Assembly (NCBI GenBank): GCA_029953675.1
Contig: JAMWBK010000006.1
Span: 1,302,001-1,366,000 of the forward strand
Reading direction: 5' to 3'
DNA length: 64,000 nt
Origin: Rhodosorus marinus CCMP1338
Lineage: Eukaryota > Plantae > Rhodophyta
Shown: positions 3,948 to 44,238 of the stretch, in pieces
Layout: every line of letters begins with the position of its first letter
Position numbering within the stretch: position 1 is the stretch's first letter
Notes under the pieces: generated by a model
Databases searched by the model: none
The model's input: the letters and a program-made list of their open reading frames with translations, nothing else
What the model was told of the DNA's origin: nothing
Translations under genes and position numbers: made by a program

Positions 3948-6696
3948 CTAGTTTCCGTCCATCTTTTCTACAGAGCAGCGATTTGCGAAAACACTATCGC
4001 CTGGGGCTGCTCGAACTACAAAGTGATAACTTTGCATTTTTGTCGCGGTGATAGTAACCGATTTCTTGGTCCATTCCGTAAACTCCCTCCTCTCTGGTGA
4101 ATACTTATCGTTCACTTCCAAAAAATTCCTGTACTTACCAGAAAAAACTGTCATCCACAGAGGTCCGCTTCCTTGAAACACGCACTCAAACACATATACC
4201 GATCCAGCTTCCAGAACCAGTGTCTGTGAAGCTTCTCCCAGGCTCGGGAGATACAAGACGACAAGGACTGCTTTTGGAAATGACCTCTCCATCACCCTGG
4301 CTTTGTTCCTGAAGATCCAAGTACTTCCCACCATATCAAACCCTGCGTCCCGTAGGAGCTCACCACCCGGAAACGGTTTGGTAGGTTGTAGACCTTCGCT
4401 AAGAACAGTAAGCGAGCATCCATCCACAGAGATTTGATGATTCGGTAGGCTGCTGAGGATGAGATCATAATAACCCAGTCCCTCCGCAGTGAATTCTAAC
4501 GACCATCGATTCCATTTCGATACGTCGACGTTTGAAACTCTTTTGATCCGCTTCACGATAACACCCCCAGTCATGACCGTCATCTTCAGCTGAGCAGAGC
4601 CCCGCGCTTGACATCTAAATCGATACTTGTATCTCGCCTTGAGAACGAGAGTCTGGGTTGCGGTGGCGCCTCCATACCCCAACAGCAAAATATAGTTTCC
4701 CTTCAAAACACCTCTGTCGCTGTATGAAGCATGCTCGTTCCTAGTCCACTTCCTCGATCTCTTTTCAAAGTCAGCATCCCTCAGATACTCACCATCAGGG
4801 CCGGGAAATGTTGCAACCAACTCTTCCGCAGTCGGCCTCACGCTCGGCATCGGTTCACTAGCAGACTCAGTCGCCGTAGTCTCGGGCATAGTCTGCACAG
4901 CCTCAGTAGCTGTGGCCGAAGGTCCAGTACTGGCCGAAGCAGAACGTTCCGCAGTTGGTTCCACAGTTGGTTCCGCAGTTGGTTCCGCAGTTGGTTCCTC
5001 AGTTACTTCCGCAGTTGGTTCACTGGTGACAGACGTCTCATGCGGCTGCCGATGTGGAAACAAACGGGCACATGGGCTTGCCACTCTTAGAAGAAGATTC
5101 GGGAGAGATTGCGTGATCCGCGTTTGAATACTTGCATGTTACCTGCGCTGTTTCGGTCTCAGTTGGATTCTCACGGATGCCACGGGATATAATTGTTCCC
5201 AGATAGATGAAATGCGAACTTAAATCCTTTCTATACTCATCATCGGCCAAGACGACGGCCACCAGCTGGAACTTGTCCCCTTCCTCAGTGTTTTGGACCA
5301 TTTGGACTTCATCCGAGATGAGCATGTACTCGTCGGGCTCCAGGTTATCACTTAAGGTGTACGAACCGAGGAAGGTGATGGAATTGACCGGCAGCGAGTA
5401 TCGCTGCACATCGAACTCATCGGTAACAAGGTAGATGCTGATGACTACGTTTCGGGCGCGCACTGGTCCACGGTTAATGACCGATAGTCTCCACTCAATC
5501 TTCTCTCCACCCCAAAACGTATCAGGTATCCAGGCGCGCTCCAAATCCGTCACAAAGTTGGAGTCAAAGAACCAGATCACATATGGCCGTTGCTCAGCTG
5601 GGGCCCAATTGCTGATCACTGAATTCAACTCTTGTCTCCTGTCCGCATCCAGCATTACAATACCAGTTAGCCGAGCGCAGCACGGAGGGCCCGAAGCGCA
5701 TCGTGTATAGGAGACCACTCCAACGATTCTCTGAGCACACAGCCCATTAACACACTGGTTTGTATATACATTTGAACCACTGAATCCGTTACAGTTGAGG
5801 GCGTCCGCTTCTCTAATCCACTGGTTCACGACGGTTTTGATCTTCCCCGATGACTTGATCAGAGTCTTACTGTCATAGTTTACCCCTGGATATCCCATGA
5901 AGCTAACTCTAGTCCCCTTTCCTGGCAGGTTGCTGGACGGTTTCAAATTTCGATTTGGAATCGGACGATCTAGTCGAAGGATACCGTAGTCGTACGACAG
6001 GCTGCCCCCTTCTGAAATGTAGCCGAAGGTCTTCACGTCCACCGCATGGGCCACTCCGTAAGGTTTGTCCGCGTGTATGTCGCTGTCTGGGTTGACATCT
6101 TCGGACATCGCCGGGATGACGAAAAAATTCCCATGATATTTGTCCCGCGCCACGCTGTACAGGCAGTGTGCTGCGGTCAACACTGTTGTGTCGTCGATCA
6201 GTGACCCCGAACAAGAGGAGTCAAAGTCTTCGATAGACGCAGATTGCTTAAACCGGAAAGTGAAGTAGATCTTGACCATACTCGACTCCGGGGACCTTTG
6301 CCACGGCATCTGCCTCTCTGTGGTTTGCCTTCCAGTCAGATTCAAAGAAAGCCTGTTGCTCTCATTGAGGTCGAATATTCCAGCGTGCTCAATCAGCTTC
6401 TCGAAACCCGTCTTGTTGACCGGGGGATCCTGCAAGGTCTCAAAAACTGGTGACGTGGGATCTTCCACAACGCTGTCCATTTGCTTACCGCCATCGTGTG
6501 ACAAAGCTAGTGGGTTCGACGCGTCGGGATCCACGTATTCAGTCTTGGCATTCGCAGAAATGACTTGAAGCGCTTTAACATTGGCGTAGGACTTTACATA
6601 GCTAAATAAGGGGTCGACTTCCTCCCAGTTGGCCTGTCCAAAACCTCCGACGACTAATGCCAAGAGGAAACCCAAAAGGTATCGTCCCGAATTCAT
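3948..6696 (-). CDS. Secreted trypsin-like (S1, bacterial V8/glutamyl-endopeptidase-like) serine protease with CARDB-like Ig domain, EPTA linker and two CBM-like domains; ~883 aa; exons 6696-5143 and 5045-3948
   Basis: Signal peptide MNSGRYLLGFLLALVVGGFG. Triad motifs CSGSLI..VLTAAHC, YDYGILRL, GYPG and GFSGS. Intron 5142-5046 (GTAAC...GGCAG, 97 nt, phase 0) joins ORFs 5038-6738 and 3948-5084 in frame. Two C-terminal repeats begin YLRDADFE and LLRDAGFD. Confidence 0.8.
4947..5020. repeat. 12-bp coding tandem repeat (TTCCGCAGTTGG-like, ~6 copies) encoding the EPTA/EPTV linker
   Basis: Directly visible; translates as EPTAEVTEEPTAEPTAEPTVEPTAE on the - strand. Confidence 0.85.
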
Positions 6697-8899
6697 CCTG
6701 CTTTCAATCCTCGCTTTTCCTGAGCACTTTCTCTCCAAATCAGCGGAAGGAGTAATCCGCGCTCATGCAAGTCTGTCAACCGTCTCAAGCACAAACACGA
6801 GCCCCTGGTAGCAGCGGCAAAAGAAATCCTATTCCATGATCACCTTCGAGGTAATCCAGCTTCGCGCAAACGCACACGGCGTTATTCAGACCAGTCCCAA
6901 CCGAGCCACCCACCTCTCACAACCCTGCTTCCACTACCTTACTGGTTACTATTTCCCAACCTCCTCAATAAAGAGAATCCCTCTCTCCGTGCCCGGAAGG
7001 CCAAGTGCAAAGGTCGACAAAGCAGAACCTTCCCAACACCCCACCTTCCCGCGCGGAGAATCCGGACCGCGCCACTTCTTCTAAATCCTCCGAATCCATC
7101 TATCGAATTTCACAACTCGAGCACAGCAATCTAGTATTATATCCATTATCTACGTAACCAAACCATCAAATTATATTTCTCAATTCATTCTAGCTCCTTA
7201 AAAAAAATGGATTCACCCCCGGGTCAAGAAAAGCTGTTTTTCGCCGTCCAGCCTCGAAAGCACTAGACAGCTCCAGCCAACAACGAGTCGGGCGCCTTTT
7301 GCCTCTTTGTTTACGGGCCTGGAAAGATTGTTGTTCTATTTCACAAGCCATAATAGCAACGTGTGACCTTCTCCGGTTTCGACCACCACCACTGACAAGA
7401 CCAACCGAAATGGAAACGAAGCCGCAAGACTTGAAAAGCGCAGAAATTGACACTCCTTCCCTATCAATTTTGCTACACTTAACATATTAAATAAACCTCA
7501 AAAAAACATAGGTTCATTTAATATTACATATAAAAATTGACTTGACCCCATTTTAATATGTAATATTAAATAAATTTCTAGATTGATATTGTTTAAGTAA
7601 AAAACAAAAAAACTCACGACCAACCCCGAAAGAACGATATTTCTCTACTCTTTCGTGCAAAGGCTCGTTTAAGTTTTCCAAATTAATATTCTTAGTATAG
7701 AATGGTTTGAATAATTCAAAATATCTTCAACTCCAAACCAATCATGTTTTGCTGCACTGCGCCAAACCAAACTAAGCGTCACTTCCCACTCCAAACGAGT
7801 TTGATCGCTCCCTACCGTCGTTTCCATTCAGGAGGAATGAATAGAGGTTATATTTTTGTGTATTTCTCATCTTCGCATCAAAATTTCACGTGATTTTAAC
7901 AGCAATGAGCATCAAACTATGAAATACGATTCACCCTGCATGAAGACTGTAAACGAAAAAAAATTCCTAATTCCAAGCGCAGGAGGAAAAATCCATCCCA
8001 ATCGCTTTTGAAGAGTTTCCACCCACCCCCTTGGAGTGAGTATTGCTTAGATGCTGAAGAGGCTTGATTGTTATTGAAATACTTTATATCTTCCGCGGAC
8101 ACGACAGAAGTGCTTATAATATCTGACGGGAGAATATTATTGATTCATGATCAGCATTCTTTTTTTTTTGTGTGATCATTGGCTTTGGGTTGGAATGGTC
8201 AGGAACGCCACCTTTTTCAGGGTTGCTCAGGAATGTGAGCCCCGAGGGGCCCGAGGGGTTGGGAACGGATCGTCAGCCCGCCACGCGTCTGGGTCTTTTT
8301 TGTCGGTTGGAGCAGACGAGTGATTTTCGAAGGCCCCCCTTTGTTAACATGCGAAGCGAGCGCAGACCTTTTCACGCACGCACCCTGCCAGCATGAACTA
8401 GAAAGTAATGAGAGTGCTTGGCAAAGCTCGTGCTTGAAGTGAAAAATGATTATTGGTTCAAGCGAACATTTTGCACCCCCTTCCAAAATCAAAAAAAATA
8501 ATCTCCGCCTCCCTTGTCGAGGAAGACCTAAGGTGCTTAGAATCCGCTTGAATTTGACGTACCCCGTTTTCCGCCGGGTTCCGGTAGCAAACCCAGTAAC
8601 CGCTTTTCGCCAGCTACCTACCGCAGAGCAAAACCAAAAAATACCAGCAATACACTACTAACCCACCTCGAAACCCAGGAGCCGGACTCACCAAAAGCGT
8701 TTAGTTCAGTCCATAATTTCGTATTCATAGAATTCACAATGAGGGAGAGTTGCGCTTCTCAAAATTTACCAAAAGGATTTGGTGAGCTTGCGCCCGTGCG
8801 AAGCTAGAATTCATGAGCTCCTAAGACATTAACGGTTCATGGAGGTTGTCTTGTGAATGAAAAGGTTACACAGATGCTGGGAAAGGAACCCTAACATCT

Positions 8900-18060: not shown

Positions 18061-18720
18061 AAGGTCTTGATTCGCATACTTAAAAGACCAGCCCTTTCCG
18101 ACCTGTTGCTTGTTCCCTAGGCGACCCTCAGAGCGTGCCAGCTTTATTAAGAGCATCCGGCAAAACCGCACGAGTCTTGTCGAGTTTCGGCTCTGGGCTG
18201 TCGCCTAGTGCCTTTGGTTATTGAGTGCTTGCGTAGTTTTCCTCGAACGAATGGTTTAATCGGAGGCTGAAAAAAAAAACCCCGAGGGGAAAAAAAGACT
18301 AAGCGCGGCGAAGTACTCGCGCCTCCAACATCAAAGCGGCATTCATGCGCCACAGCAGGTTTTCCTAGCGCACCGTCGGTGGTTAAATAAGTAAATTTTC
18401 CGGTTTCACGAGTTCGATTGGCTCTCCTTGGCTTCGTGGAGTGTTCCGAGAGCACCCAGAACGGCTCCCTTCGCTGTGTACCTGCTTGAGTCTCCAGTAA
18501 AGCTTATGAATTCTGCATTGATGTTGGAGGTCTGCGATTTACACCTGTAGTCTTCCTAGACTCTGAATGATCACTAAGCCTTCGTTCAAAGTCGATCTAG
18601 GCTAAAAACCGATTTTCTCGTGTTTCATGTTCTCTGTGATTCTTGATTCTCGGAAAAATCTCCGATTTCGTCAGAAACGATGGACTCGCACGAAAACATT
18701 GATAAAATATAACAATCCCG

Positions 18721-18791
18721 TACACCAACCGGGAATCGAACCCGGGTCTCATCCTTGGGAGGGATGTATTCTACCACTAGACCATTGGCGT
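18721..18791 (-). tRNA. tRNA-Gly (anticodon CCC), intronless
   Basis: ACGCCAA/TTGGTGT acceptor stem, D arm TGGTCTAGTGGTAGAATA, anticodon stem CATCC-CT-CCC-AA-GGATG and T arm CCGGGTTCGATTCCCGG. Confidence 0.93.
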
Positions 18792-26423: not shown

Positions 26424-29400
26424 ATGAAGACTTTGCGGTTTATCCTTGGCATTGCACTGCTCGGGGTATTCCTGAATGTGGATGGTGTTATCATCGATCG
26501 CGAGAACATTGTGAATGAACTTGTGGCTGAGTCAGACCAGATCCAAACTCCGATCGATATTGATTGGATTCCTGGTGATGTAACGCGTATGCTTATCTGT
26601 GACAAGCGTGGAATCATTTTCCTGATGATCGATGGAGAGCTCCAGCCAAAACCGTTTTTGGATATCAGGAGCAAGGTAGAAAGCATTGGTTCCAGAGGTC
26701 TGTTTGCCTGCCTGGTAGATAAGAATTTCTCGAAGAATCCATACATCTACCTCAGCTACGTTGACAACAGGGTACAGTCCCCGCCGGATAGGGCCAAGTC
26801 TGGCAAAATCGTGAAATACAAAGTCAACAACGCGCTGACGGAAGCCAGCGGAGAGGTTGTCCTCGTCGGCAAGCAGTTTCCCCCCGTAAACGGCTGTGGT
26901 TCCAATAAGTCGATTGGACGGAAGGACATTATCTGCCTCGATGCGAATCAGCACAACATCGGGTACCTTGTACAGAACCCCGCTAACGGGGAAATCTTCG
27001 CTGGTCTCGGTGACGCCGCAATCCCTTCGACATTCGACGATCTGCCCTTCCGTGCTTTTGACCTCGACTTCTTAGTCGGAAAAGTGTTGTGCATTCAACG
27101 AAATGGACGAGGGTGCCAGGGCAATCCGTTTGTCAGGAACGGCAATCTCAAAGAGAACCGTGGGAAAGTATGGAGTTACGGTTATCGCTTCCCCTTCCGA
27201 GGAAACTGGGACCCGGTGAATAAGCTCCCGCTCACAGCACACGTTGGATTCGCTCGATATGAAAGCATAGTTCTTACCAGAAAGGGCCTGAACTTCGGAT
27301 GGCCGTGCATGGAAGGGCCAAAGGAGAACCCGAAAGCGGCCACGGATCCAATCTGCAAGCAGATAAAGAGCGGGAAGATCGAGTTGGATAAGAATAGGTC
27401 GCTTTGGGACTATGACCACAACTTTGGAACCTCCGTCACCGGTGTAGAACGACTAAGCTCGGACAAGTGGCCTGAGAGCATGAAGAACTTGCTGGCGGTG
27501 GCTGATTATACCAAGAGCTGGATCAAGTTGATCGAGGTCACGCGGAACGGTATCGTTGGCAAGCCTCAGGACCTGCTGTCGGATGTACTCGGTCCAGTTC
27601 AGGTAAAGCAGGGACCGGATGGCCATCTCTACTACATTTCCATCCTGGCCCAGAGCGTGAGCAGGATCAGGTTCCAGCTTGATACCACCAAGCCAGAGGT
27701 TGTACAAGTACTACCTCCGTTTGGGTCTTCCAATGCGGAAACGACTACGCCAGTTGAGATAAAGTTCTCCAAGAGGATTGACTTTGACACGGTCAACAGG
27801 CAGAGAGTCAGAGTTGTGAACGCCAAAAATAACAAGGCGGTTGCTCTGAGCTTCTCATGGGATGCGGCGAGAAACACGGTTGTTGCACAGCCGAATGGAC
27901 GGCTTGCGAGAAACACTGACTACGAAGTGACTGTATCGGGTATCAAAGACAACCAAGGACGGACAATGGTTGGAAATTTCAAGTCGTCTTTCAAAACTGG
28001 AACAGGGTTCTCGCTCTATATCTCCGATCTCAAGTTTGTGAAGGCAATCAATGGAAAGGACAAAGTTCTGCGGGACAAGCAGCCGTTCCAGAGTGCGCAG
28101 AAGGTTCAACCGCAACTGTCCATTCGTGGAACAATATACCCTAAGGGCCTAGGAGTCCATGCAAGATCAGAGGTTGTTGTGGACCTGCCACAGGGATGCA
28201 CGAGGCTCCAAGCTTACGTAGGTGTCGACGATTTGAGACGGAACCTTGAAGAGGGAGAACTGTTCTATGAAGTACTGGCTGATAAGAAGCGCGTGTTCTA
28301 CACCCAAAACCCGACGACGAAACAAGGACCTGCCGTATACGTCGACGCTAGGGTAGCTGCAGCCAGCCGAGTTACGTTAATCACGACCAAGAGCGGAAGG
28401 ACAGGTCCAGCTGCGGCTGTGGGAACATGGGGAGATGCACAGTTTCGATGTGGTGGCTACGATACTGCACGCCCGAAGGTAACCAAGGTTTCCCCTGGGC
28501 AGGGGTTAGGAATAAATGGTAGTATTGACGTCACTTTCAGCGAACCTATGGACGTCAAGAGCACTGTGGCAGCGACTGAGTTGCTACTCCCGATCGCACT
28601 TGGAGGATATGACCTTGGCTTCACAACTACTTTCAGCAAGAGTCTGAAGACTATGACTATCAAACCAAATCAGCCTCTGCTGCACGATACTGAATATCAG
28701 CTGACGATCCAGAGCTCAGCAGAGGACCTATCCCAGAACAGGCTCTCCGCAGACGTTCAACGCAACCTTAAGACGGCGGCAGTTGCACCAAATGGAGAGA
28801 GGATCGGACTTGTAGAGCTTGTGACGAGGGGTAGAAATCCCGCTGCGAATTTCAGGAAGATTGTAGGTGGCGGAGGTAATACGGGAACAAGAGTTAGGCA
28901 GTTTAACAATGGTATTGCAATGACCGGGTACTCGGTTGCCACGTTCCAGCTTCCTGGATCCGGATGCACTTCAATTTCGTTTATCGCCGGAAAGGAGAAC
29001 GCGAGAAAGGACGGTGAGACCTGCCGCATGAAGATGTTTGAAGCTACGGGGCCACAAGGGGCAGAGAAGACTGTGTTTGACGAAGAGTTCACCGATTCGC
29101 GGGCATCCGTAACTGTCAAGAACAAGACTCTCACCAATGCCAGACGCCTGCGTCTGATAGTGGCCAAGTCTCCACCAGCGCCGGGCCCGGTGCAATGCTC
29201 TTGGGCGGCTGTCCAATTGACATGTGGCGGGGAGCAGGTGCTTCTCACAAAGCAAGAAGTGGTGGACAGAGTTGGCAACGCTCTGGGCATAAACAAGCGC
29301 CGGAGCGGGCAGCCTATCGCACTCCGCATACCAACTACTGGTACTGGTGGTGGCACTCCTACTAAGATCGAACTCAAGCCAAATGTTGAGGTTAAGTACA

Positions 29401-30185
29401 TAACGCCGGGTGTCTGCTCTACCCTCAACATGAGAGTCGATGCCAAGAACGGTGGGACGGTGAACGTGCAGTTGCTCAGCGGTAACGGCAGGCAGCTGTG
29501 CCAAACTGGAACACTCAACAGCGGCACCGGGAAAAACATCAGCTGCAACGTCAGAGGTGTATCTAGACTGACCTTGAAGGCTACAGGCAGTGGCGGGGTC
29601 GCGGAGATTTCGAATGCGAACTTTAATTGTGCGAAGGGCTCACGACAACCGCGTTGTGAATTTGGCGATTTCCCCGCCAACTTCAAGGTTAAGGATGAAG
29701 TTTGCTACAGTGCAACCTGCTACAACTTCAAGGGACAGGTATTGCCGGCCTCGTCTGTGTCTTGGGTAACGAAGATCATTCATTGCCAAGCTTTGTGCCA
29801 CGAGCATGAGGAGGAGACTACGCGAGGAAATCGCGGGTGCTATACCATACCGGATCATGGGGATTTCTTCTTTATGGAGTTTGATGTGATAGCCAGAGAT
29901 GGCGAAGCAGTCAGCGTTTATACGAGACAAGTCCGGCCGCAAACTGTCACTGTTACCGTAACAACAATGCCACCTGGTATTGATGTTGGAGTTGACTCGC
30001 TCGCCGGTCCATCTCCGCTTAAATCCATAGTGCTTGTAGGAGCAAAGTTCACTGCGAACGTTCCTGCCAAGTCCGGGAAAAATACGTTCAAGTTCTGGGA
30101 TGATAACAGAAACGCGCCAGGGGACAGACCGTTCCAGTTCAACAAAGCCGGAACACGAAAATACAACGCAGTGTACACCAGATAA
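26424..30185 (+). CDS. Secreted glucose/sorbosone (PQQ-type) dehydrogenase-like beta-propeller with Big_5 Ig-like, NPCBM (CBM51-like) and further Ig/NPCBM-like modules; 1253 aa, intronless
   Basis: Signal peptide. GSDH motifs RGLFACLVDKNF..NPYIYLSY, HNIG..., GKVLCI, NPF, YGYRFPFR and NFGWPCMEG. Big_5 motifs IKFSKRID and VTFSEPMD. NPCBM motifs YISDL...YPKGLGVHARSEV...VGVDD...WGDA. Confidence 0.85.
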   Translation: MKTLRFILGIALLGVFLNVDGVIIDRENIVNELVAESDQIQTPIDIDWIPGDVTRMLICDKRGIIFLMIDGELQPKPFLDIRSKVESIGSRGLFACLVDKNFSKNPYIYLSYVDNRVQSPPDRAKSGKIVKYKVNNALTEASGEVVLVGKQFPPVNGCGSNKSIGRKDIICLDANQHNIGYLVQNPANGEIFAGLGDAAIPSTFDDLPFRAFDLDFLVGKVLCIQRNGRGCQGNPFVRNGNLKENRGKVWSYGYRFPFRGNWDPVNKLPLTAHVGFARYESIVLTRKGLNFGWPCMEGPKENPKAATDPICKQIKSGKIELDKNRSLWDYDHNFGTSVTGVERLSSDKWPESMKNLLAVADYTKSWIKLIEVTRNGIVGKPQDLLSDVLGPVQVKQGPDGHLYYISILAQSVSRIRFQLDTTKPEVVQVLPPFGSSNAETTTPVEIKFSKRIDFDTVNRQRVRVVNAKNNKAVALSFSWDAARNTVVAQPNGRLARNTDYEVTVSGIKDNQGRTMVGNFKSSFKTGTGFSLYISDLKFVKAINGKDKVLRDKQPFQSAQKVQPQLSIRGTIYPKGLGVHARSEVVVDLPQGCTRLQAYVGVDDLRRNLEEGELFYEVLADKKRVFYTQNPTTKQGPAVYVDARVAAASRVTLITTKSGRTGPAAAVGTWGDAQFRCGGYDTARPKVTKVSPGQGLGINGSIDVTFSEPMDVKSTVAATELLLPIALGGYDLGFTTTFSKSLKTMTIKPNQPLLHDTEYQLTIQSSAEDLSQNRLSADVQRNLKTAAVAPNGERIGLVELVTRGRNPAANFRKIVGGGGNTGTRVRQFNNGIAMTGYSVATFQLPGSGCTSISFIAGKENARKDGETCRMKMFEATGPQGAEKTVFDEEFTDSRASVTVKNKTLTNARRLRLIVAKSPPAPGPVQCSWAAVQLTCGGEQVLLTKQEVVDRVGNALGINKRRSGQPIALRIPTTGTGGGTPTKIELKPNVEVKYITPGVCSTLNMRVDAKNGGTVNVQLLSGNGRQLCQTGTLNSGTGKNISCNVRGVSRLTLKATGSGGVAEISNANFNCAKGSRQPRCEFGDFPANFKVKDEVCYSATCYNFKGQVLPASSVSWVTKIIHCQALCHEHEEETTRGNRGCYTIPDHGDFFFMEFDVIARDGEAVSVYTRQVRPQTVTVTVTTMPPGIDVGVDSLAGPSPLKSIVLVGAKFTANVPAKSGKNTFKFWDDNRNAPGDRPFQFNKAGTRKYNAVYTR

Positions 30186-39496: not shown

Positions 39497-42013
39497 CTAA
39501 AAATAATTGTCCCCTCTGCTGTTCCATCCTGCGGGTGGTTGCGGTCTCGGTGTGGCTGCTGGCTCTCCATTTGGTCTTCTTGGTATAACACGGTACAATC
39601 GGCAATTATCCACCACGGCTCGACCGTTGTCTGCGAGCAGCCTAACAATGTAATTACCGTCCTCTGGTACACTGAACCTCATCTGCTTCTCTCCAAAGTC
39701 CGCTTCTCCCATATAATACGCCCTCTCATAGCCCCTTGCGACCGGAACAGGCGTCCGGTCTCTAAACACCAGAAACCTTACCAACAGCCCAACGGTAGCG
39801 CAGGAAAGACGATACGTGAAGCTCTCTCTGAGCCGAACCACCTGCTGAACCATGCCCCCTACTGGCAAGTACAAACCAGCGGTTCCCCGTCTCCTATACA
39901 ACTCAGAGATCCTCGCACCACCAGCAAAATCCCAGGCAGAGTCGGACTCGAAACCACGATTCTGAAGAAGCGGTGGCCCTATCTCATACCAATCCACTGT
40001 TGGAGGCGGGGCTGGAGCGCCGATAGGATATGCGAATGGAGAATCACATAGCTCTGGCTCCTCACCAGTTACCCCATCGATTCCATCCAGAGCACAGCAA
40101 GCCGCCCCCTCGCAATTGTCCACCTGAATAGTCACGGAGCTGATCGTCCCTCCACCAGAACCAGGAGGGTATCTGATCGTAACCTTGGGATTGCGCCCCA
40201 GTCGCTCCAAGCTCACGGTAGCGCTGAAGGCACCAAACCAAGCGAACTTGTTGTGGTCACGCTTCCCGCCCGCAAAATCGGGGTGGTACTGAACCGGAAC
40301 ACCATTCACCTTAACTTCAGGATCGTCGCTCCTAGACCAGCCCCGGGAGTGCGCAACTCTGATAGTTCCAACTCCTCTGCCTGTAGGTAGGCCATTGAAC
40401 ATAAATACATGATCCACACCAGATCGGATATCGACCAACACCTTGTCGGAATAGTGTCTGGTCCTGTTGATCTCGCGCCTAGCGTTAACGTTTTCATTGA
40501 AGGTGAACTCGTATGTAACCATTTCGTCATGTCCAATCGTGAGATTGCTGGGTAGTTGCGCTGGCCGATTGCCTGACTCCCTGGAGATGATAGTATTCTC
40601 ATACACCATCCTTCCACCTCGCTCTAGGTTGAGGGCCTTATCCCGAGCGGTGAGCGGAGCATCCACCAGGTAGAGTCGTTTCCTGCTTACCCTCTCCAAG
40701 CGCCTTGAAATGGTTCCCGGAAACTTGAACTGCAAGTCCACGGGAGAATCGCGGAGATTCTGAATAAGCATCCACGATTTGTTTCTGCTAACGAACGAGT
40801 GCACATAGATATCCGGATGTGATGAAGTGGAGTAGGTGAACCGTCCGGAAACTCCTTGGAGCAGTCGATAGTATCGTACGAGGTTGGTCATTCTGAAATT
40901 GGCTTCACTTCTCGCCACGGTCAGTGACCAGGGATATTTAGGGTCTCCCGGGTCGACTCGAAACCCTCCGTCGGCTGTCATGAAAGTGACCGCCTTGTCG
41001 ATATTATCCGGCGTCCTGAGCAATCCATGCAAGACCTTCATCGCCTCTGCCATAATCTGGAACTCCTGTCCATCAGTACCGGGCATCGCTTTCCTATTTT
41101 CCTTGTCATACCATATCCTGTTGAAGGATCCGAACTCGGACGCGACGTACTTGTAGATCTTCCCTTTCTGGATTTTCATGTAAGTCTCAAGGAGGTCAAT
41201 ATTCCCCTCAAGAATTCCACCTCCAACGTCGTAGAGATGCTCGGATATGAAATCTTGGCAGTCGTTGATGTTGTCCAGCCAGACCTTCATTTTCTCCCGG
41301 AAGTAGTCGAAGCGATGAAAGTACGGGCGAGTGAACGCAGCGGCTGGTCCTCCAACTTTCATGTCTGGGTGGAAGAGCTTGACTGTGGTGCAAAGTCTGT
41401 TGCATCTTCTCGTTAACCTTATTATCATTTCCCTTTCCGTTTGGTCGCCTGGACGGAGGGCTCTCCATTTGCCGAGTGGTTCGTTAAAACACTCATAAAT
41501 CAGAGGTCTGTAGTAGCCTCTGGAGTCATCGAAATAGTAGTTGAAGTAATTTGCCGCGTAGTAGTCATCATCACGGCTGAAACGGTTGATGACAGTTCTC
41601 ATGCGCAGTGCGGTATCGGAAACGATTCGCAGAGGCTTTATCTGCGTCCTTGTGAAACCACAATCCTTGCAGAAATACTTCGTCAGCATTGCCCTCCTTC
41701 CCGCCGTCTCCATCTCTTGCTCTGTGATACTGTCTTGCTCCCACAGGTCGGAAGCGGTAAAAGGCCCATCTCCCCCGCTCCGACCGAAGTCAATGTTGAG
41801 GGGGTCGGCAAACCTTCTCATAATCTCCTTCGGAACTTGGGCCTCGCTGTACCTCCCATGTGCGACTACGAAAACATCCCTGTCGAACCTGACGGTTCCC
41901 TCGGTTCTCAAGATCGTCTCTAAATCACACGTGATCGACTCCTGCTTCGTTCTGAGACCTGCAACCATCCCAACGGTGGTGACCACCAACAACGAGATCC
42001 AGAAACCTGCCAT
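39497..42013 (-). CDS. Secreted GH86 beta-porphyranase/beta-agarase-like glycoside hydrolase with C-terminal CBM-like domain; 838 aa, intronless
   Basis: Signal peptide. Clan GH-A motifs YECFNEP and ASEFG. KVGGPAAAF, FREKMKVWLD, FISEHLYD and NIDLLETY match remembered GH86 porphyranase A segments. A BPA_C-like segment WFGAF...GGTISSVTIQV is followed by an LLQNRGFE module. Confidence 0.8.
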   Translation of the reverse strand: MAGFWISLLVVTTVGMVAGLRTKQESITCDLETILRTEGTVRFDRDVFVVAHGRYSEAQVPKEIMRRFADPLNIDFGRSGGDGPFTASDLWEQDSITEQEMETAGRRAMLTKYFCKDCGFTRTQIKPLRIVSDTALRMRTVINRFSRDDDYYAANYFNYYFDDSRGYYRPLIYECFNEPLGKWRALRPGDQTEREMIIRLTRRCNRLCTTVKLFHPDMKVGGPAAAFTRPYFHRFDYFREKMKVWLDNINDCQDFISEHLYDVGGGILEGNIDLLETYMKIQKGKIYKYVASEFGSFNRIWYDKENRKAMPGTDGQEFQIMAEAMKVLHGLLRTPDNIDKAVTFMTADGGFRVDPGDPKYPWSLTVARSEANFRMTNLVRYYRLLQGVSGRFTYSTSSHPDIYVHSFVSRNKSWMLIQNLRDSPVDLQFKFPGTISRRLERVSRKRLYLVDAPLTARDKALNLERGGRMVYENTIISRESGNRPAQLPSNLTIGHDEMVTYEFTFNENVNARREINRTRHYSDKVLVDIRSGVDHVFMFNGLPTGRGVGTIRVAHSRGWSRSDDPEVKVNGVPVQYHPDFAGGKRDHNKFAWFGAFSATVSLERLGRNPKVTIRYPPGSGGGTISSVTIQVDNCEGAACCALDGIDGVTGEEPELCDSPFAYPIGAPAPPPTVDWYEIGPPLLQNRGFESDSAWDFAGGARISELYRRRGTAGLYLPVGGMVQQVVRLRESFTYRLSCATVGLLVRFLVFRDRTPVPVARGYERAYYMGEADFGEKQMRFSVPEDGNYIVRLLADNGRAVVDNCRLYRVIPRRPNGEPAATPRPQPPAGWNSRGDNYF

Positions 42014-43774: not shown

Positions 43775-44238
43775 GTATGAAGGATGACCGACATGGTCGG
43801 GTGAGTTTGCGTTTACTTTGCCCCACGTGTATTTCAAGTCAGCACTATTTTGGGCGCGGAGAAGCTCGATCGTGTCATCGATGGTCTGTGGCTAGAGTTC
43901 GAAAAGTACATCTACGTATGATGTTATAGGTATGCACGATAATGAGCGATATGGCAAAATTCGGGTGAGGTTGCCCACTTTGCCCGACGTTTATTTCAAG
44001 CCTCACTATTTCGGACTCCGAGAAGCTCGATCGCGTCATCGATTATCTGTGGCCAGAGTTCGAAAAGTACATCTACGTATGACGTTGGGTATGAACGATA
44101 ATGACCGACATGGCAAAATTCGGGTGTGTTCGCGTACTTTGCCGGACGTTTATTTCAAGCCACTATTTTGCACTCCGATAAGCTCGATCGCGTCACCGTT
44201 TATCTGTGGTCAAGAGTTCGAAAAGTACATCTACATAT
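43775..44238. repeat. Diverged tandem repeat, ~160-bp unit x3
   Basis: The anchor GTTCGAAAAGTACATCTAC starts at 43897, 44058 and 44216 (spacings 161 and 158). Confidence 0.9.

What the first reader, a model, noticed from the sequence alone, without database searches (positions are those of the whole stretch)
39497..42013. Eukaryote-encoded GH86 beta-porphyranase/agarase-like enzyme in a probable red alga
Seen: an intact, intronless 838-aa ORF with a signal peptide, both putative catalytic Glu motifs (FNEP, SEFG), a BPA_C-like domain and an extra CBM-like C-terminal module, sitting between eukaryotic genes. Established: characterized GH86 enzymes (e.g. Bacteroides plebeius porphyranase A, marine bacterial agarases) are bacterial and cut red-algal sulfated galactans. 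Inference: the alga may use an acquired, or ancestrally retained, GH86 to remodel its own galactan wall or mucilage. I cannot confirm that it is undescribed.
Basis: partly seen in the sequence, partly recalled or inferred. Interest (0 to 1): 0.8.

Follow-up and report, generated by a model that had tools for sequence, protein, structure and literature searches.

The report
Red alga's own GH86 galactanase gene
A unicellular red alga (Rhodosorus marinus) carries in its nuclear genome an intact, secreted enzyme of family GH86, otherwise characterised only in bacteria that digest red-seaweed galactans; it belongs to an undescribed algal gene family that most likely remodels the alga's own galactan mucilage.

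Summary
Window 39497-42013 (-) is an intact, single-exon 838-aa ORF. It is a genuine GH86 by sequence (PDB hits 1e-27; profile 2e-63) and by fold (AlphaFold pLDDT 84; the top seven Foldseek hits are all GH86 crystal structures, E 3e-43). Both catalytic Glu residues are kept (E178 in FNEP, E293 in SEFG). It has a hydrophobic N-terminus and a C-terminal CBM4/16/61-like module.

The window is Rhodosorus marinus scaffold JAMWBK010000006.1 (2.47 Mb). The neighbours are XPG, Cpn10, cyclin and C2H2 zinc-finger genes, and the gene's codon usage matches theirs, so contamination is very unlikely.

New here: the gene belongs to a family of at least four genomic paralogs in R. marinus. There are also expressed copies in MMETSP Rhodosorus strains and in Bangiopsis (poly(A) transcript), and four copies in an unidentified organism. 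Together these form a clade with 100% bootstrap support, only 22-30% identical to any bacterial GH86. The donor lineage is unresolved.

Several substrate-contacting residues that are near-invariant in bacteria are replaced, so specificity is probably not classical agarase or porphyranase. Self-remodelling of the galactose-rich Stylonematophyceae sheath is plausible but untested, and no transcript of this particular paralog was found. I found no publication describing eukaryotic GH86. The red-algal GH16 porphyranases are the precedent.

The parts
39497..42013 (-). Complete single-exon gene for an 838-aa GH86 family protein (Rhodosorus marinus JAMWBK010000006.1, about 1.34 Mb)
   Evidence: ORF; identical NCBI gene model; GH86 homology
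41954..42013 (-). Residues 1-20 (MAGFWISLLVVTTVGMVAGL): hydrophobic N-terminus, probable signal peptide
   Evidence: Kyte-Doolittle window means >2; low-pLDDT helix preceding the fold; an equivalent hydrophobic N-terminus in all paralogs. No dedicated predictor was run.
40859..41944 (-). Residues about 24-385: (alpha/beta)8 catalytic barrel of clan GH-A, family GH86
   Evidence: AF2 pLDDT mostly >90; Foldseek hits to 5TA5, 5TA0, 5TA1, 8H97 and 4AW7, target TM 0.82-0.84
41480..41482 (-). E178 (FNEP motif): predicted catalytic acid/base
   Evidence: Aligns with the NEP Glu of BuGH86, Aga86A_Wa and BpGH86A; Glu in 137 of 138 family members
41135..41137 (-). E293 (SEFG motif): predicted catalytic nucleophile
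   Evidence: Aligns with the Glu that is Gln in the 5TA0 E322Q nucleophile mutant (PMC5849685); invariant in 138 of 138
40961..40984 (-). Residues 344-351 (FMTADGGF): the segment after beta-8. It contains T346, which is equivalent to the BpGH86A S326 sulfate-pocket base and to the BuGH86 pocket-filling Met. The bacterial K-A-x-W motif is lost here.
   Evidence: Residue mapping and PMC5849685
40484..40846 (-). Residues about 390-510: first Ig-like beta-sandwich (Porphyrn_cat_1)
   Evidence: Pfam PF18206, E 6.9e-10; beta-strands in the AF2 model
40112..40477 (-). Residues about 513-634: second beta-sandwich (BPA_C, beta-porphyranase A C-terminal domain)
   Evidence: Pfam PF18040, E 8.9e-12; aligned to PDB chains through residue about 634
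39974..40111 (-). Residues 635-680: Cys-rich (C639, C640, C656, following C634) then Pro-rich linker
   Evidence: The cysteines are invariant among the Rhodosorus paralogs; low pLDDT
39578..39973 (-). Residues about 681-812: carbohydrate-binding-module-like beta-sandwich (CBM_4_9 superfamily; CBM16/CBM61/CBM4/CBM22-like)
   Evidence: Profile A4 against the PDB: 8XMZ 1e-23, CBM16 2ZEW 4e-16, galactan-binding CBM61 2XOM/9FLI 1e-13 to 1e-14; homologous modules in all algal paralogs and some bacterial GH86; beta-sandwich in the AF2 model, pLDDT 50-86
39500..39577 (-). Residues 813-838: Pro-rich C-terminal tail ending ...GWNSRGDNYF. The protein stops exactly where paralog NDN08_000603 continues into a PT-rich linker and two further CBM modules.
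   Evidence: Alignment; no linker or CBM coding sequence in any frame downstream

Best explanation
The gene encodes a secreted, catalytically competent retaining glycoside hydrolase of family GH86 that belongs to the nuclear genome of the red alga Rhodosorus marinus. Its architecture is: signal peptide, (alpha/beta)8 barrel with E178 as acid/base and E293 as nucleophile (double-displacement mechanism), two Ig-like beta-sandwiches, a Cys/Pro-rich linker, and one CBM4/16/61-like sugar-binding module.

It is one paralog of an old, diversified gene family specific to Stylonematophyceae-type algae. That family most likely arose by a single ancient transfer of a bacterial GH86 gene followed by duplications.

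Shown: identity, fold, catalytic residues, genomic residence, family structure, and expression of paralogs.

Inferred: the enzyme is exported to the mucilaginous sheath. Its CBM anchors it to the galactose-rich sulfated polysaccharide, and the barrel cuts internal beta-galactosidic bonds to loosen or turn over the wall or mucilage, for example during cell expansion, daughter-cell release or sheath shedding. Because several minus-subsite residues conserved in bacterial agarases and porphyranases are replaced, its fine specificity is probably tuned to the alga's own galactan rather than to agarose or porphyran.
For: GH86 identity:
- phmmer against the PDB gives 9.5e-27 to BuGH86, 3e-21 to Aga86A_Wa and 2e-20 to BpGH86A; the profile search gives 2.4e-63.
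- The AF2 model has pLDDT 83.8 and pTM 0.80. The top seven Foldseek hits are all GH86 (E 3e-43 to 2e-38, target TM 0.82-0.84), and the next families (GH30, GH39) are at or above 5e-16.
- Catalytic and family-invariant residues are kept: R78, E174, N177, E178, P179, H259, Y261, E293, G295.

Algal residence:
- The gene lies on a 2.47-Mb Nanopore-based scaffold of R. marinus, flanked by XPG, Cpn10, HAD, cyclin and zf-C2H2 genes.
- GC3 is 0.588 and RSCU r = 0.73 with the other window genes, against -0.43 to 0.45 for bacterial GH86 genes.
- No inverted repeats or mobile-element signs flank the gene.

Family:
- Paralogs NDN08_000603 and NDN08_000604 lie about 210 kb away, next to the ribosomal protein S4e gene. 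NDN08_000131 is on another scaffold. MMETSP transcripts exist from Rhodosorus, and there is a Bangiopsis transcript with a poly(A) tail.
- The 13-member clade has NJ bootstrap 1.00 (300 replicates).

Substrate plausibility:
- Bound polysaccharides of Stylonematophyceae are 58-87% galactose. An FT-IR band suggests 3,6-anhydrogalactose, and a seaweed-like sulfated galactan was reported from Chroodactylon (PMC9031348).
- The CBM profile's PDB hits include the galactan-binding CBM61.

Precedent: red-algal GH16 beta-porphyranase, explained by HGT plus duplication (PMC9771727).
Against: No biochemical data exist for any member of the algal clade.

No transcript or close ortholog of this particular paralog was found in the 5.8-billion-protein collection or in the JGI contigs, so its expression is unverified.

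Positions that are near-invariant in bacterial GH86 are replaced: the aromatic at 223 becomes Pro, R263 becomes Val, K348 becomes Asp, and the K-A-x-W motif is lost. The substrate might therefore not be an agar-type galactan at all.

The polysaccharide of R. marinus itself has not been characterised in the literature I could reach.

The tree is distance-based, and its root and the donor lineage are unresolved, so 'ancient HGT' rests mainly on the taxonomic distribution.
Confidence: 0.6

Rival explanations
1. The enzyme is active and secreted but acts on foreign polysaccharides. It might scavenge carbon from dissolved seaweed galactans, attack neighbouring red algae, or break up bacterial biofilms, rather than act on the alga's own wall.
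For: All characterised GH86 enzymes are catabolic (PMC5849685). The multi-CBM, PT-linker architectures of the paralogs resemble bacterial secreted degraders.
Against: R. marinus is a photoautotroph embedded in its own galactose-rich mucilage. No downstream agar-catabolic genes (GH117, GH50 or GH2 types) lie near any of the loci examined. The family has been kept and diversified in at least two or three sheath-forming algae.
Confidence: 0.12
2. The catalytic machinery is intact but the substrate is not an agar- or porphyran-type galactan. The remodelled minus subsites may target another beta-linked glycan of the sheath, such as a xylogalactan or a methylated or uronic-acid-containing heteropolymer.
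For: Bacterially conserved Y/F223, R263, K348 and the K-A-x-W motif are replaced in group A. Composition in Stylonematophyceae varies, with xylose reaching up to 59%. The -2 subsite determinants are neither agarase-like nor porphyranase-like (T346, G80).
Against: R78, H52, E174, N177, H259 and Y261 are all retained. They are invariant or nearly invariant across the family, and I infer that they form the -1 subsite. The -1 subsite is identical in the agarase and the porphyranase. Galactose dominates the polysaccharide of Bangiopsis, which carries the family.
Confidence: 0.2
3. This particular paralog is a silent or decaying copy. It is a truncated duplicate that has lost the PT linker and two CBMs and is no longer used.
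For: It is shorter than NDN08_000603 and stops exactly at the linker boundary. No transcript ortholog was found in the MMETSP Rhodosorus strains, whereas three other paralogs have transcripts.
Against: The 838-codon frame is uninterrupted. All family-invariant residues and the clade-invariant cysteines are kept. Codon usage is host-like. At 55% identity to its nearest paralog, it has been under long-term maintenance rather than recent decay. One-CBM architectures are normal in the clade.
Confidence: 0.08
4. The gene is bacterial contamination or a chimeric join in the assembly, not an algal gene.
For: GH86 was previously characterised only in bacteria. Red-algal cultures carry agarolytic bacteria.
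Against: It is embedded at about 1.34 Mb in a 2.47-Mb scaffold between XPG, Cpn10, cyclin and zinc-finger genes. Its codon usage is host-like. It is at most 30% identical to any bacterial protein among 1.84 billion representatives. Paralogs lie on two scaffolds and appear in poly(A)-selected transcriptomes of other strains and another genus.
Confidence: 0.02

Closest known systems
BuGH86, endo-beta-agarase of Bacteroides uniformis NP1 (PDB 5TA0/5TA1/5TA5; Pluvinage et al. 2018, PMC5849685)
   Same: Best sequence and structure match (E 9.5e-27; Foldseek E 3e-43, target TM 0.84). It has the same barrel plus two Ig-like domains. The NEP acid/base and SE nucleophile align; BuGH86 E322 corresponds to window E293.
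   Different: Identity is only about 19-28%. BuGH86 is bacterial and periplasmic, sits in a polysaccharide utilisation locus, and has no CBM. It has a Met filling the -2 pocket where the alga has T346. The bacterial GGY, YDR and K-x-x-W residues are replaced in the alga by GGP, YDV and D-G-G-F.
BpGH86A, beta-porphyranase of Bacteroides plebeius (PDB 4AW7)
   Same: Same fold and catalytic residues (E 2e-20; Foldseek E 1.8e-38). It has a small hydroxyl residue (S326) at the base of the 6-sulfate pocket, and the alga has Thr at the aligned position.
   Different: BpGH86A F77, which fills the kink made by L-galactose-6-sulfate, aligns approximately with window G80. The K-A-x-W motif is present in BpGH86A and absent in the window protein. 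BpGH86A is bacterial and catabolic.
Aga86A_Wa, GH86 agarase of Wenyingzhuangia (PDB 8H97), and marine agarase homologs (Microbulbifer, Agarivorans, Lutibacter agarilyticus, Flammeovirga, Agaribacterium)
   Same: Full-length colinear alignment over residues about 7-640 at 22-30% identity. Some bacterial members carry the same type of C-terminal CBM.
   Different: They fall outside the algal clade, which has 100% bootstrap support. Their codon usage and genomic context are bacterial.
Red-algal GH16 galactanases, e.g. CcGH16-3 beta-porphyranase of Chondrus crispus (PMC9771727)
   Same: Same biological concept: a red alga encodes a homolog of bacterial red-galactan hydrolases. It is explained by ancient bacterium-to-alga transfer followed by duplication, and is proposed to act on the alga's extracellular matrix.
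   Different: The fold and family are unrelated (GH16 beta-jelly roll against GH86 TIM barrel). GH16 occurs in multicellular Florideophyceae and Bangiales, whereas GH86 was found here only in Stylonematophyceae-type sequences. CcGH16-3 has been assayed, and no algal GH86 has.
R. marinus paralogs NDN08_000603 (P0003), NDN08_000604 (P0010) and NDN08_000131 (P0007), and Bangiopsis sp. CCMP1999 transcript (P0008)
   Same: Same clade, same catalytic residues, same domain order, and the same CBM type.
   Different: Identity to the window protein is 55%, 26%, 33% and 30%. NDN08_000603 has a long PT linker and three CBM copies. Group B members and Bangiopsis keep the bacterial-type K/R-x-x-W motif that the window's group A has lost.

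Membership tests
Glycoside hydrolase family 86 (CAZy GH86, clan GH-A) | Significant sequence similarity to GH86 members, stronger than to any other GH family | tested here: met
   PDB phmmer gives only GH86 chains, at 9.5e-27 to 2e-20. The profile gives 2.4e-63. The Pfam GH86-specific domains BPA_C and Porphyrn_cat_1 score above their gathering cutoffs, while GH39 is only at E 0.07.
Glycoside hydrolase family 86 (CAZy GH86, clan GH-A) | (alpha/beta)8 barrel followed by two Ig-like beta-sandwich domains | tested here: met
   AF2 model pLDDT 83.8. The top seven Foldseek hits are all GH86, target TM 0.82-0.84. GH30 and GH39 are 27 or more orders of magnitude weaker.
Glycoside hydrolase family 86 (CAZy GH86, clan GH-A) | Catalytic acid/base Glu (NEP, strand 4) and nucleophile Glu (S/T-E, strand 7) | tested here: met
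   E178 and E293 align with the catalytic Glu residues of the solved enzymes. The 5TA0 E322Q mutant has Gln at the E293 column. The two positions are conserved in 137 and 138 of 138 sequences.
Glycoside hydrolase family 86 (CAZy GH86, clan GH-A) | Substrate-binding residues near-invariant in bacterial members: aromatic after GG (position 223), Arg after H-x-Y-D (263), and the K-A-x-W motif after strand 8 (348-351) | tested here: not met
   The window has P223, V263, and D348 with F351. Bacteria have an aromatic at 223 in 125 of 125, Arg at 263 in 108 of 125, and Lys at 348 in 107 of 125. This marks a divergent subfamily. It does not exclude the protein from GH86, which is defined by sequence and fold.
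Glycoside hydrolase family 86 (CAZy GH86, clan GH-A) | -2 subsite signature separating agarase (Thr and Met) from porphyranase (Phe and Ser) | tested here: inconclusive
   Window T346 aligns with the porphyranase Ser and the agarase Met. Window G80 aligns approximately with the agarase Thr and the porphyranase Phe. The pattern is mixed.
Glycoside hydrolase family 86 (CAZy GH86, clan GH-A) | Endo-beta-agarase (EC 3.2.1.81) or beta-porphyranase (EC 3.2.1.178) activity | not testable with these tools
   This requires recombinant enzyme assays.
CBM_4_9-type carbohydrate-binding module (CBM4/16/22/61 beta-sandwich superfamily) | Sequence-profile similarity to solved CBMs of this superfamily | tested here: met
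   The profile of 19 module copies (A4) hits 8XMZ at 1.2e-23, CBM16 2ZEW at 3.6e-16, CBM61 2XOM at 6e-13, and CBM22 and CBM4 xylanase modules at 4e-07 to 3e-05.
CBM_4_9-type carbohydrate-binding module (CBM4/16/22/61 beta-sandwich superfamily) | Direct Pfam PF02018 hit on the window's own module | tested here: not met
   Residues 636-838 have no Pfam hit at E <= 1. Homologous modules in P0003 (1.9e-08) and P0009 (2.3e-06) do hit PF02018, and jackhmmer links them to the window's module.
CBM_4_9-type carbohydrate-binding module (CBM4/16/22/61 beta-sandwich superfamily) | Binds a polysaccharide | not testable with these tools
   This requires binding assays.
Horizontally acquired, host-domesticated red-algal galactanase (as proposed for red-algal GH16) | Located in the nuclear genome among eukaryotic genes, with host-like composition | tested here: met
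Horizontally acquired, host-domesticated red-algal galactanase (as proposed for red-algal GH16) | Algal sequences are monophyletic and the family is otherwise bacterial | tested here: met
   The 13-sequence clade has bootstrap 1.00. All 20 non-clade relatives whose source was checked are bacterial isolates, MAGs or long metagenome contigs; the other non-clade sequences in the tree were not checked.
Horizontally acquired, host-domesticated red-algal galactanase (as proposed for red-algal GH16) | Algal clade nested within an identifiable bacterial donor group | tested here: inconclusive
   The algal stem attaches between two large bacterial groups of 66 and 59 sequences, and the midpoint root falls on that stem.

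The most novel reading that the evidence does not exclude
The algal GH86 clade, and especially the window's group A, keeps the retaining catalytic pair but has rebuilt the sugar-binding subsites. It may not be a degradative agarase or porphyranase at all. It could instead be a wall-building or wall-editing enzyme of a new specificity, for example an endo-transglycosylase that cuts and re-ligates the sulfated galactan of the sheath. That would be the red-algal functional counterpart of plant xyloglucan endotransglycosylases, evolved from a captured bacterial hydrolase.
Probability: 0.15. Interest if true: 0.75.

Novelty: new variant of a known kind. Interest (0 to 1): 0.5.

Why it matters
GH86 is treated as a family of bacterial red-seaweed degraders. 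A domesticated GH86 family that is duplicated, expressed and specific to eukaryotes would be the second, independent case after GH16 of a red alga using a captured bacterial galactanase. It would also be the first in the early-branching, mucilage-sheathed Stylonematophyceae.

This gives a concrete molecular handle on two questions: how unicellular and pseudofilamentous red algae loosen or shed their sheaths, and whether agar-like galactans predate the seaweeds.

The clade's altered subsites also make it a source of potentially new galactan-cutting specificities for oligosaccharide production and polysaccharide structure analysis. It is also a caution for metagenomics: GH86 reads are not automatically bacterial.

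Tried and rejected
- A downstream continuation of the gene (PT linker and extra CBMs, as in NDN08_000603) via an intron or frameshift: all three frames downstream lack it, so this was rejected.
- AF2 with only the four Rhodosorus sequences gave an unusable model (pLDDT 43). It was replaced by a run on a 110-sequence alignment.
- The word-indexed homolog search with the single protein found nothing beyond Rhodosorus; the two profile searches added nothing (A2) or returned only their first query sequence (A5). The exhaustive HMMER search was needed.
- Two scans of JGI metagenome contigs found no relative.
- Literature searches for Rhodosorus with GH86, GH86 with eukaryote and alga, and the SRR accessions found no description. 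The original BpGH86A paper was not held under the id I tried.
- The organism behind SRR22824290 and SRR22824282 (four clade members) could not be identified.
- Contamination or a chimeric assembly was rejected on context, codon usage and paralogs.
- A mobile-element vehicle was considered: no inverted repeats flank the gene.
- NCBIfam has no model for the protein.
Full report
1. OBSERVATION

Window 39497-42013 (-) is an uninterrupted 838-codon ORF that starts at ATG and ends at TAG. The public annotation calls the same single-exon gene.

Pfam finds the two GH86-specific beta-sandwich domains above their curated cutoffs: BPA_C at 537-631 (E 8.9e-12) and Porphyrn_cat_1 at 401-451 (E 6.9e-10). 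GH39 gives only a sub-threshold trace. NCBIfam has no model. The first 20 residues are strongly hydrophobic. This fits a signal peptide, but no dedicated predictor was available.

2. ORGANISM AND CONTEXT

The protein is encoded on Rhodosorus marinus GCA_029953675.1, scaffold JAMWBK010000006.1 (2,472,615 bp), at about 1.34 Mb. This is the Nanopore-based, Pilon-polished pseudo-chromosomal assembly of strain CCMP1338 (PMC10250338). R. marinus is a unicellular red alga of the class Stylonematophyceae.

The called neighbours within 10 kb on either side are XPG nuclease, Cpn10, a HAD hydrolase, a C2H2 zinc-finger protein, a PHO80-type cyclin and a GSDH-NPCBM protein. The Cpn10 and HAD gene spans exceed their coding lengths, which implies introns. 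Long ORFs are sparse across the 64 kb, and there is one tRNA-Gly.

The GH86 gene has GC3 of 0.588, within the range of the other window genes (0.545-0.642). Its codon usage correlates with theirs (RSCU r = 0.73), whereas five bacterial GH86 genes give r from -0.43 to 0.45. No inverted repeats bracket the gene. I therefore reject contamination or a chimeric join as far as sequence alone allows.

3. FAMILY MEMBERSHIP

Sequence searches of the PDB return only GH86 chains: BuGH86 5TA1/5TA0 at 9.5e-27, Aga86A_Wa 8H97 at 3e-21, and BpGH86A 4AW7 at 2e-20. A profile of the algal paralogs reaches 2.4e-63.

A first AlphaFold run on four sequences failed (pLDDT 43). A second run, on a 110-sequence alignment, gave pLDDT 83.8 and pTM 0.80, with most of residues 25-640 above 90. 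The top seven Foldseek hits against the PDB are all GH86 structures (E 3e-43 to 2e-38, target-normalised TM 0.82-0.84). The next families, GH30 and GH39, are at 5e-16 or weaker.

E178 aligns with the NEP acid/base. E293 aligns with the nucleophile, which is the residue mutated to Gln in the 5TA0 E322Q structure. In a 138-sequence family alignment these positions are Glu in 137 and 138 sequences. E174, N177, P179, H259, Y261 and G295 are likewise near-invariant across those 138 and are retained here; R78 is invariant in the 110-sequence alignment. The enzyme should therefore be a competent retaining glycosidase.

4. C-TERMINAL MODULE

Residues about 681-812 have no Pfam hit on their own. jackhmmer links them to one to three homologous modules in every algal paralog, and to modules in some bacterial GH86 proteins. 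Some of those modules hit Pfam CBM_4_9.

A profile of 19 such modules hits solved CBM-type beta-sandwiches: 8XMZ at 1e-23, CBM16 2ZEW at 4e-16, the beta-1,4-galactan-binding CBM61 of Thermotoga galactanase (2XOM/9FLI) at 1e-13 to 1e-14, and CBM22 and CBM4 xylanase modules.

The window protein ends (...GWNSRGDNYF) exactly where paralog NDN08_000603 continues into a PT-rich linker and two more CBMs. No such sequence lies downstream in any frame.

5. A GENE FAMILY, NOT A SINGLETON

An exhaustive HMMER search of 1.84 billion representatives found only 319 GH86 relatives. The eleven best non-self hits, plus one further down the list (P0019), are algal-type:

- R. marinus NDN08_000603 and its MMETSP ortholog (55% identity).
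- Two further MMETSP Rhodosorus transcripts (P0004 and P0152, 36-38%).
- NDN08_000131, on another 1.1-Mb scaffold (33%).
- NDN08_000604 (26%).
- A Bangiopsis sp. CCMP1999 transcript (30%), whose contig ends in a poly(A) tail.
- Four proteins from single-gene contigs of runs SRR22824290 and SRR22824282. The organism is unidentified, and its codon usage resembles that of R. marinus (r 0.47-0.63).

NDN08_000603 and NDN08_000604 sit 7 kb apart, about 210 kb from the window gene, beside the ribosomal protein S4e gene.

In a neighbour-joining tree (138 sequences, 471 columns) the 13 algal-type sequences form a clade with bootstrap 1.00 (300 replicates). The window's subgroup A (8 sequences) also has 1.00.

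The bacterial relatives whose source was checked are Saccharicrinis, Marinoscillum, Microbulbifer, Agarivorans, Lutibacter agarilyticus, Phycisphaeraceae, Pelagicoccus, Flammeovirga, Agaribacterium and Gayadomonas, plus unnamed proteins on long MAG or metagenome contigs. They are only 22-30% identical.

The algal stem attaches between two large bacterial groups, and the midpoint root falls on it, so no donor can be named. Identities within the clade (25-55%) are as low as those between algae and bacteria, so the family is old or fast-evolving.

No sequence from another named eukaryotic lineage was identified among the hits (only 20 of the non-clade proteins had their source checked), although the library includes other red-algal genomes and MMETSP transcriptomes. 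A single ancient transfer into a Stylonematophyceae ancestor is therefore more parsimonious than ancestral retention. This is an inference.

6. WHAT IT PROBABLY DOES

Shown: a secretion-type N-terminus, an intact retaining catalytic apparatus, a CBM, and expression of paralogs.

Inferred: the enzyme is exported into the mucilaginous sheath and cleaves internal beta-galactosidic bonds of the alga's own polysaccharide. Supporting chemistry comes from relatives:

- Bound polysaccharides of Stylonematophyceae are galactose-rich (Bangiopsis 78%, Rhodaphanes 87%, Chroothece 58%).
- FT-IR suggests 3,6-anhydrogalactose in Chroodactylon, Rhodaphanes and Bangiopsis.
- A seaweed-like sulfated galactan was described from the Chroodactylon sheath (PMC9031348).

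The polymer of R. marinus itself is uncharacterised in what I could read.

7. SPECIFICITY

Pluvinage et al. (PMC5849685) attribute agarose-versus-porphyran selectivity to the -2 subsite. In the porphyranase, F77 and S326 leave a 6-sulfate pocket open; in the agarase, T82 and a Met fill it. By alignment the S326/Met position is T346 in the window protein, which is small and hydroxylated and so porphyranase-like. The F77/T82 position is approximately G80.

More striking is that residues near-invariant in bacterial GH86 are replaced in the algal clade:

- The aromatic after GG (aromatic in 125 of 125 bacteria) is Pro in 10 of 13 algal sequences.
- The Arg after H-x-Y-D (108 of 125 bacteria) is aliphatic or small in all 13.
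- In group A, the K-A-x-W motif after strand 8 is lost (window D348 with F351).

I could not inspect the model coordinates, so the spatial roles of these residues are inferred. I conclude that fine specificity probably differs from the characterised enzymes. 'Agarase/porphyranase' should be read as the family name, not as a prediction.

8. COMPARISON AND NOVELTY

The protein is a member of GH86 by every sequence and structural criterion, but it belongs to a distinct eukaryotic subclade. I found no paper mentioning GH86 in Rhodosorus or in any eukaryote. UniProt only auto-labels the paralogs as 'Beta-porphyranase A C-terminal domain-containing protein'.

The conceptual precedent is the red-algal GH16 family. 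CcGH16-3 of Chondrus crispus is a proven beta-porphyranase, explained by bacterial HGT followed by duplication (PMC9771727), and that paper does not mention GH86. I therefore rate this a new variant of a known kind: interesting to algal cell-wall and CAZyme specialists, but not a new principle.

9. OPEN POINTS

- Expression of this particular paralog is unverified. No transcript ortholog was found.
- The tree is distance-based and unrooted.
- The SRR22824290 organism is unknown.
- No biochemical data exist for any member of the algal clade.

Noticed in passing
window 26424-30185 (+): A 1253-aa ORF combines a glucose/sorbosone dehydrogenase beta-propeller (GSDH), bacterial Ig-like Big_5 domains and an NPCBM/NEW2 carbohydrate-binding domain (E 5e-36). 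This is a bacterial-style secreted architecture only about 9 kb from the GH86 gene. Its codon usage is host-like (RSCU r 0.76). It may be another old bacterial acquisition tied to the extracellular matrix.
   Followed up: partly
L002:704-3322 (-) and L002:10001-13801 (+) (same scaffold, about 210 kb from the window gene): Two further GH86 genes, NDN08_000604 (group B, 872 aa) and NDN08_000603 (group A, 1266 aa, PT-rich linker plus three CBM copies), sit 7 kb apart in divergent orientation, near the 40S ribosomal protein S4e gene.
   Followed up: partly
L010, L011, L012, L014, L015 (Logan contigs of SRR22824290 and SRR22824282): Four distinct members of the algal GH86 clade (P0005, P0009, P0011, P0019) come from one unidentified organism. 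Each lies on a 3.6-5.6-kb contig with a single gene and long non-coding flanks, and codon usage resembles R. marinus. It is probably another member of Stylonematophyceae, but this is unproven.
   Followed up: partly
window 43815-44238: A 161-bp tandem repeat (2.7 copies, 86% matches) lies in the intergenic region about 1.8 kb upstream of the GH86 start codon. It creates a spurious 102-aa ORF with internal repeats.
   Followed up: no
window 3948-6738 (-): A trypsin-like serine protease ORF (5038-6738) is followed immediately by an overlapping ORF with a PT-rich repeat (3948-5084). They may be one secreted protease gene split by an intron or a frameshift. PT-rich linkers also occur in the GH86 paralogs.
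   Followed up: no
window 39974-40111 (residues 635-680): A cluster of cysteines (C634, C639, C640, C656) lies between the BPA_C domain and the CBM. It is invariant among the Rhodosorus paralogs and absent from the solved bacterial enzymes. It may be a disulfide-stabilised hinge specific to the algal clade.
   Followed up: no
PMC5849685, section 10, compared with the PDB 5TA1 SEQRES alignment: The paper names the pocket-filling methionine of BuGH86 'M396'. The Met that aligns with BpGH86A S326 is SEQRES residue 372, which is residue 369 in the numbering where the nucleophile is E322. This looks like a digit transposition in the paper.
   Followed up: partly
window 18720-18791 (-): A tRNA-Gly(CCC) gene (Rfam 60.6 bits), the only RNA gene detected in the window.
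   Followed up: no
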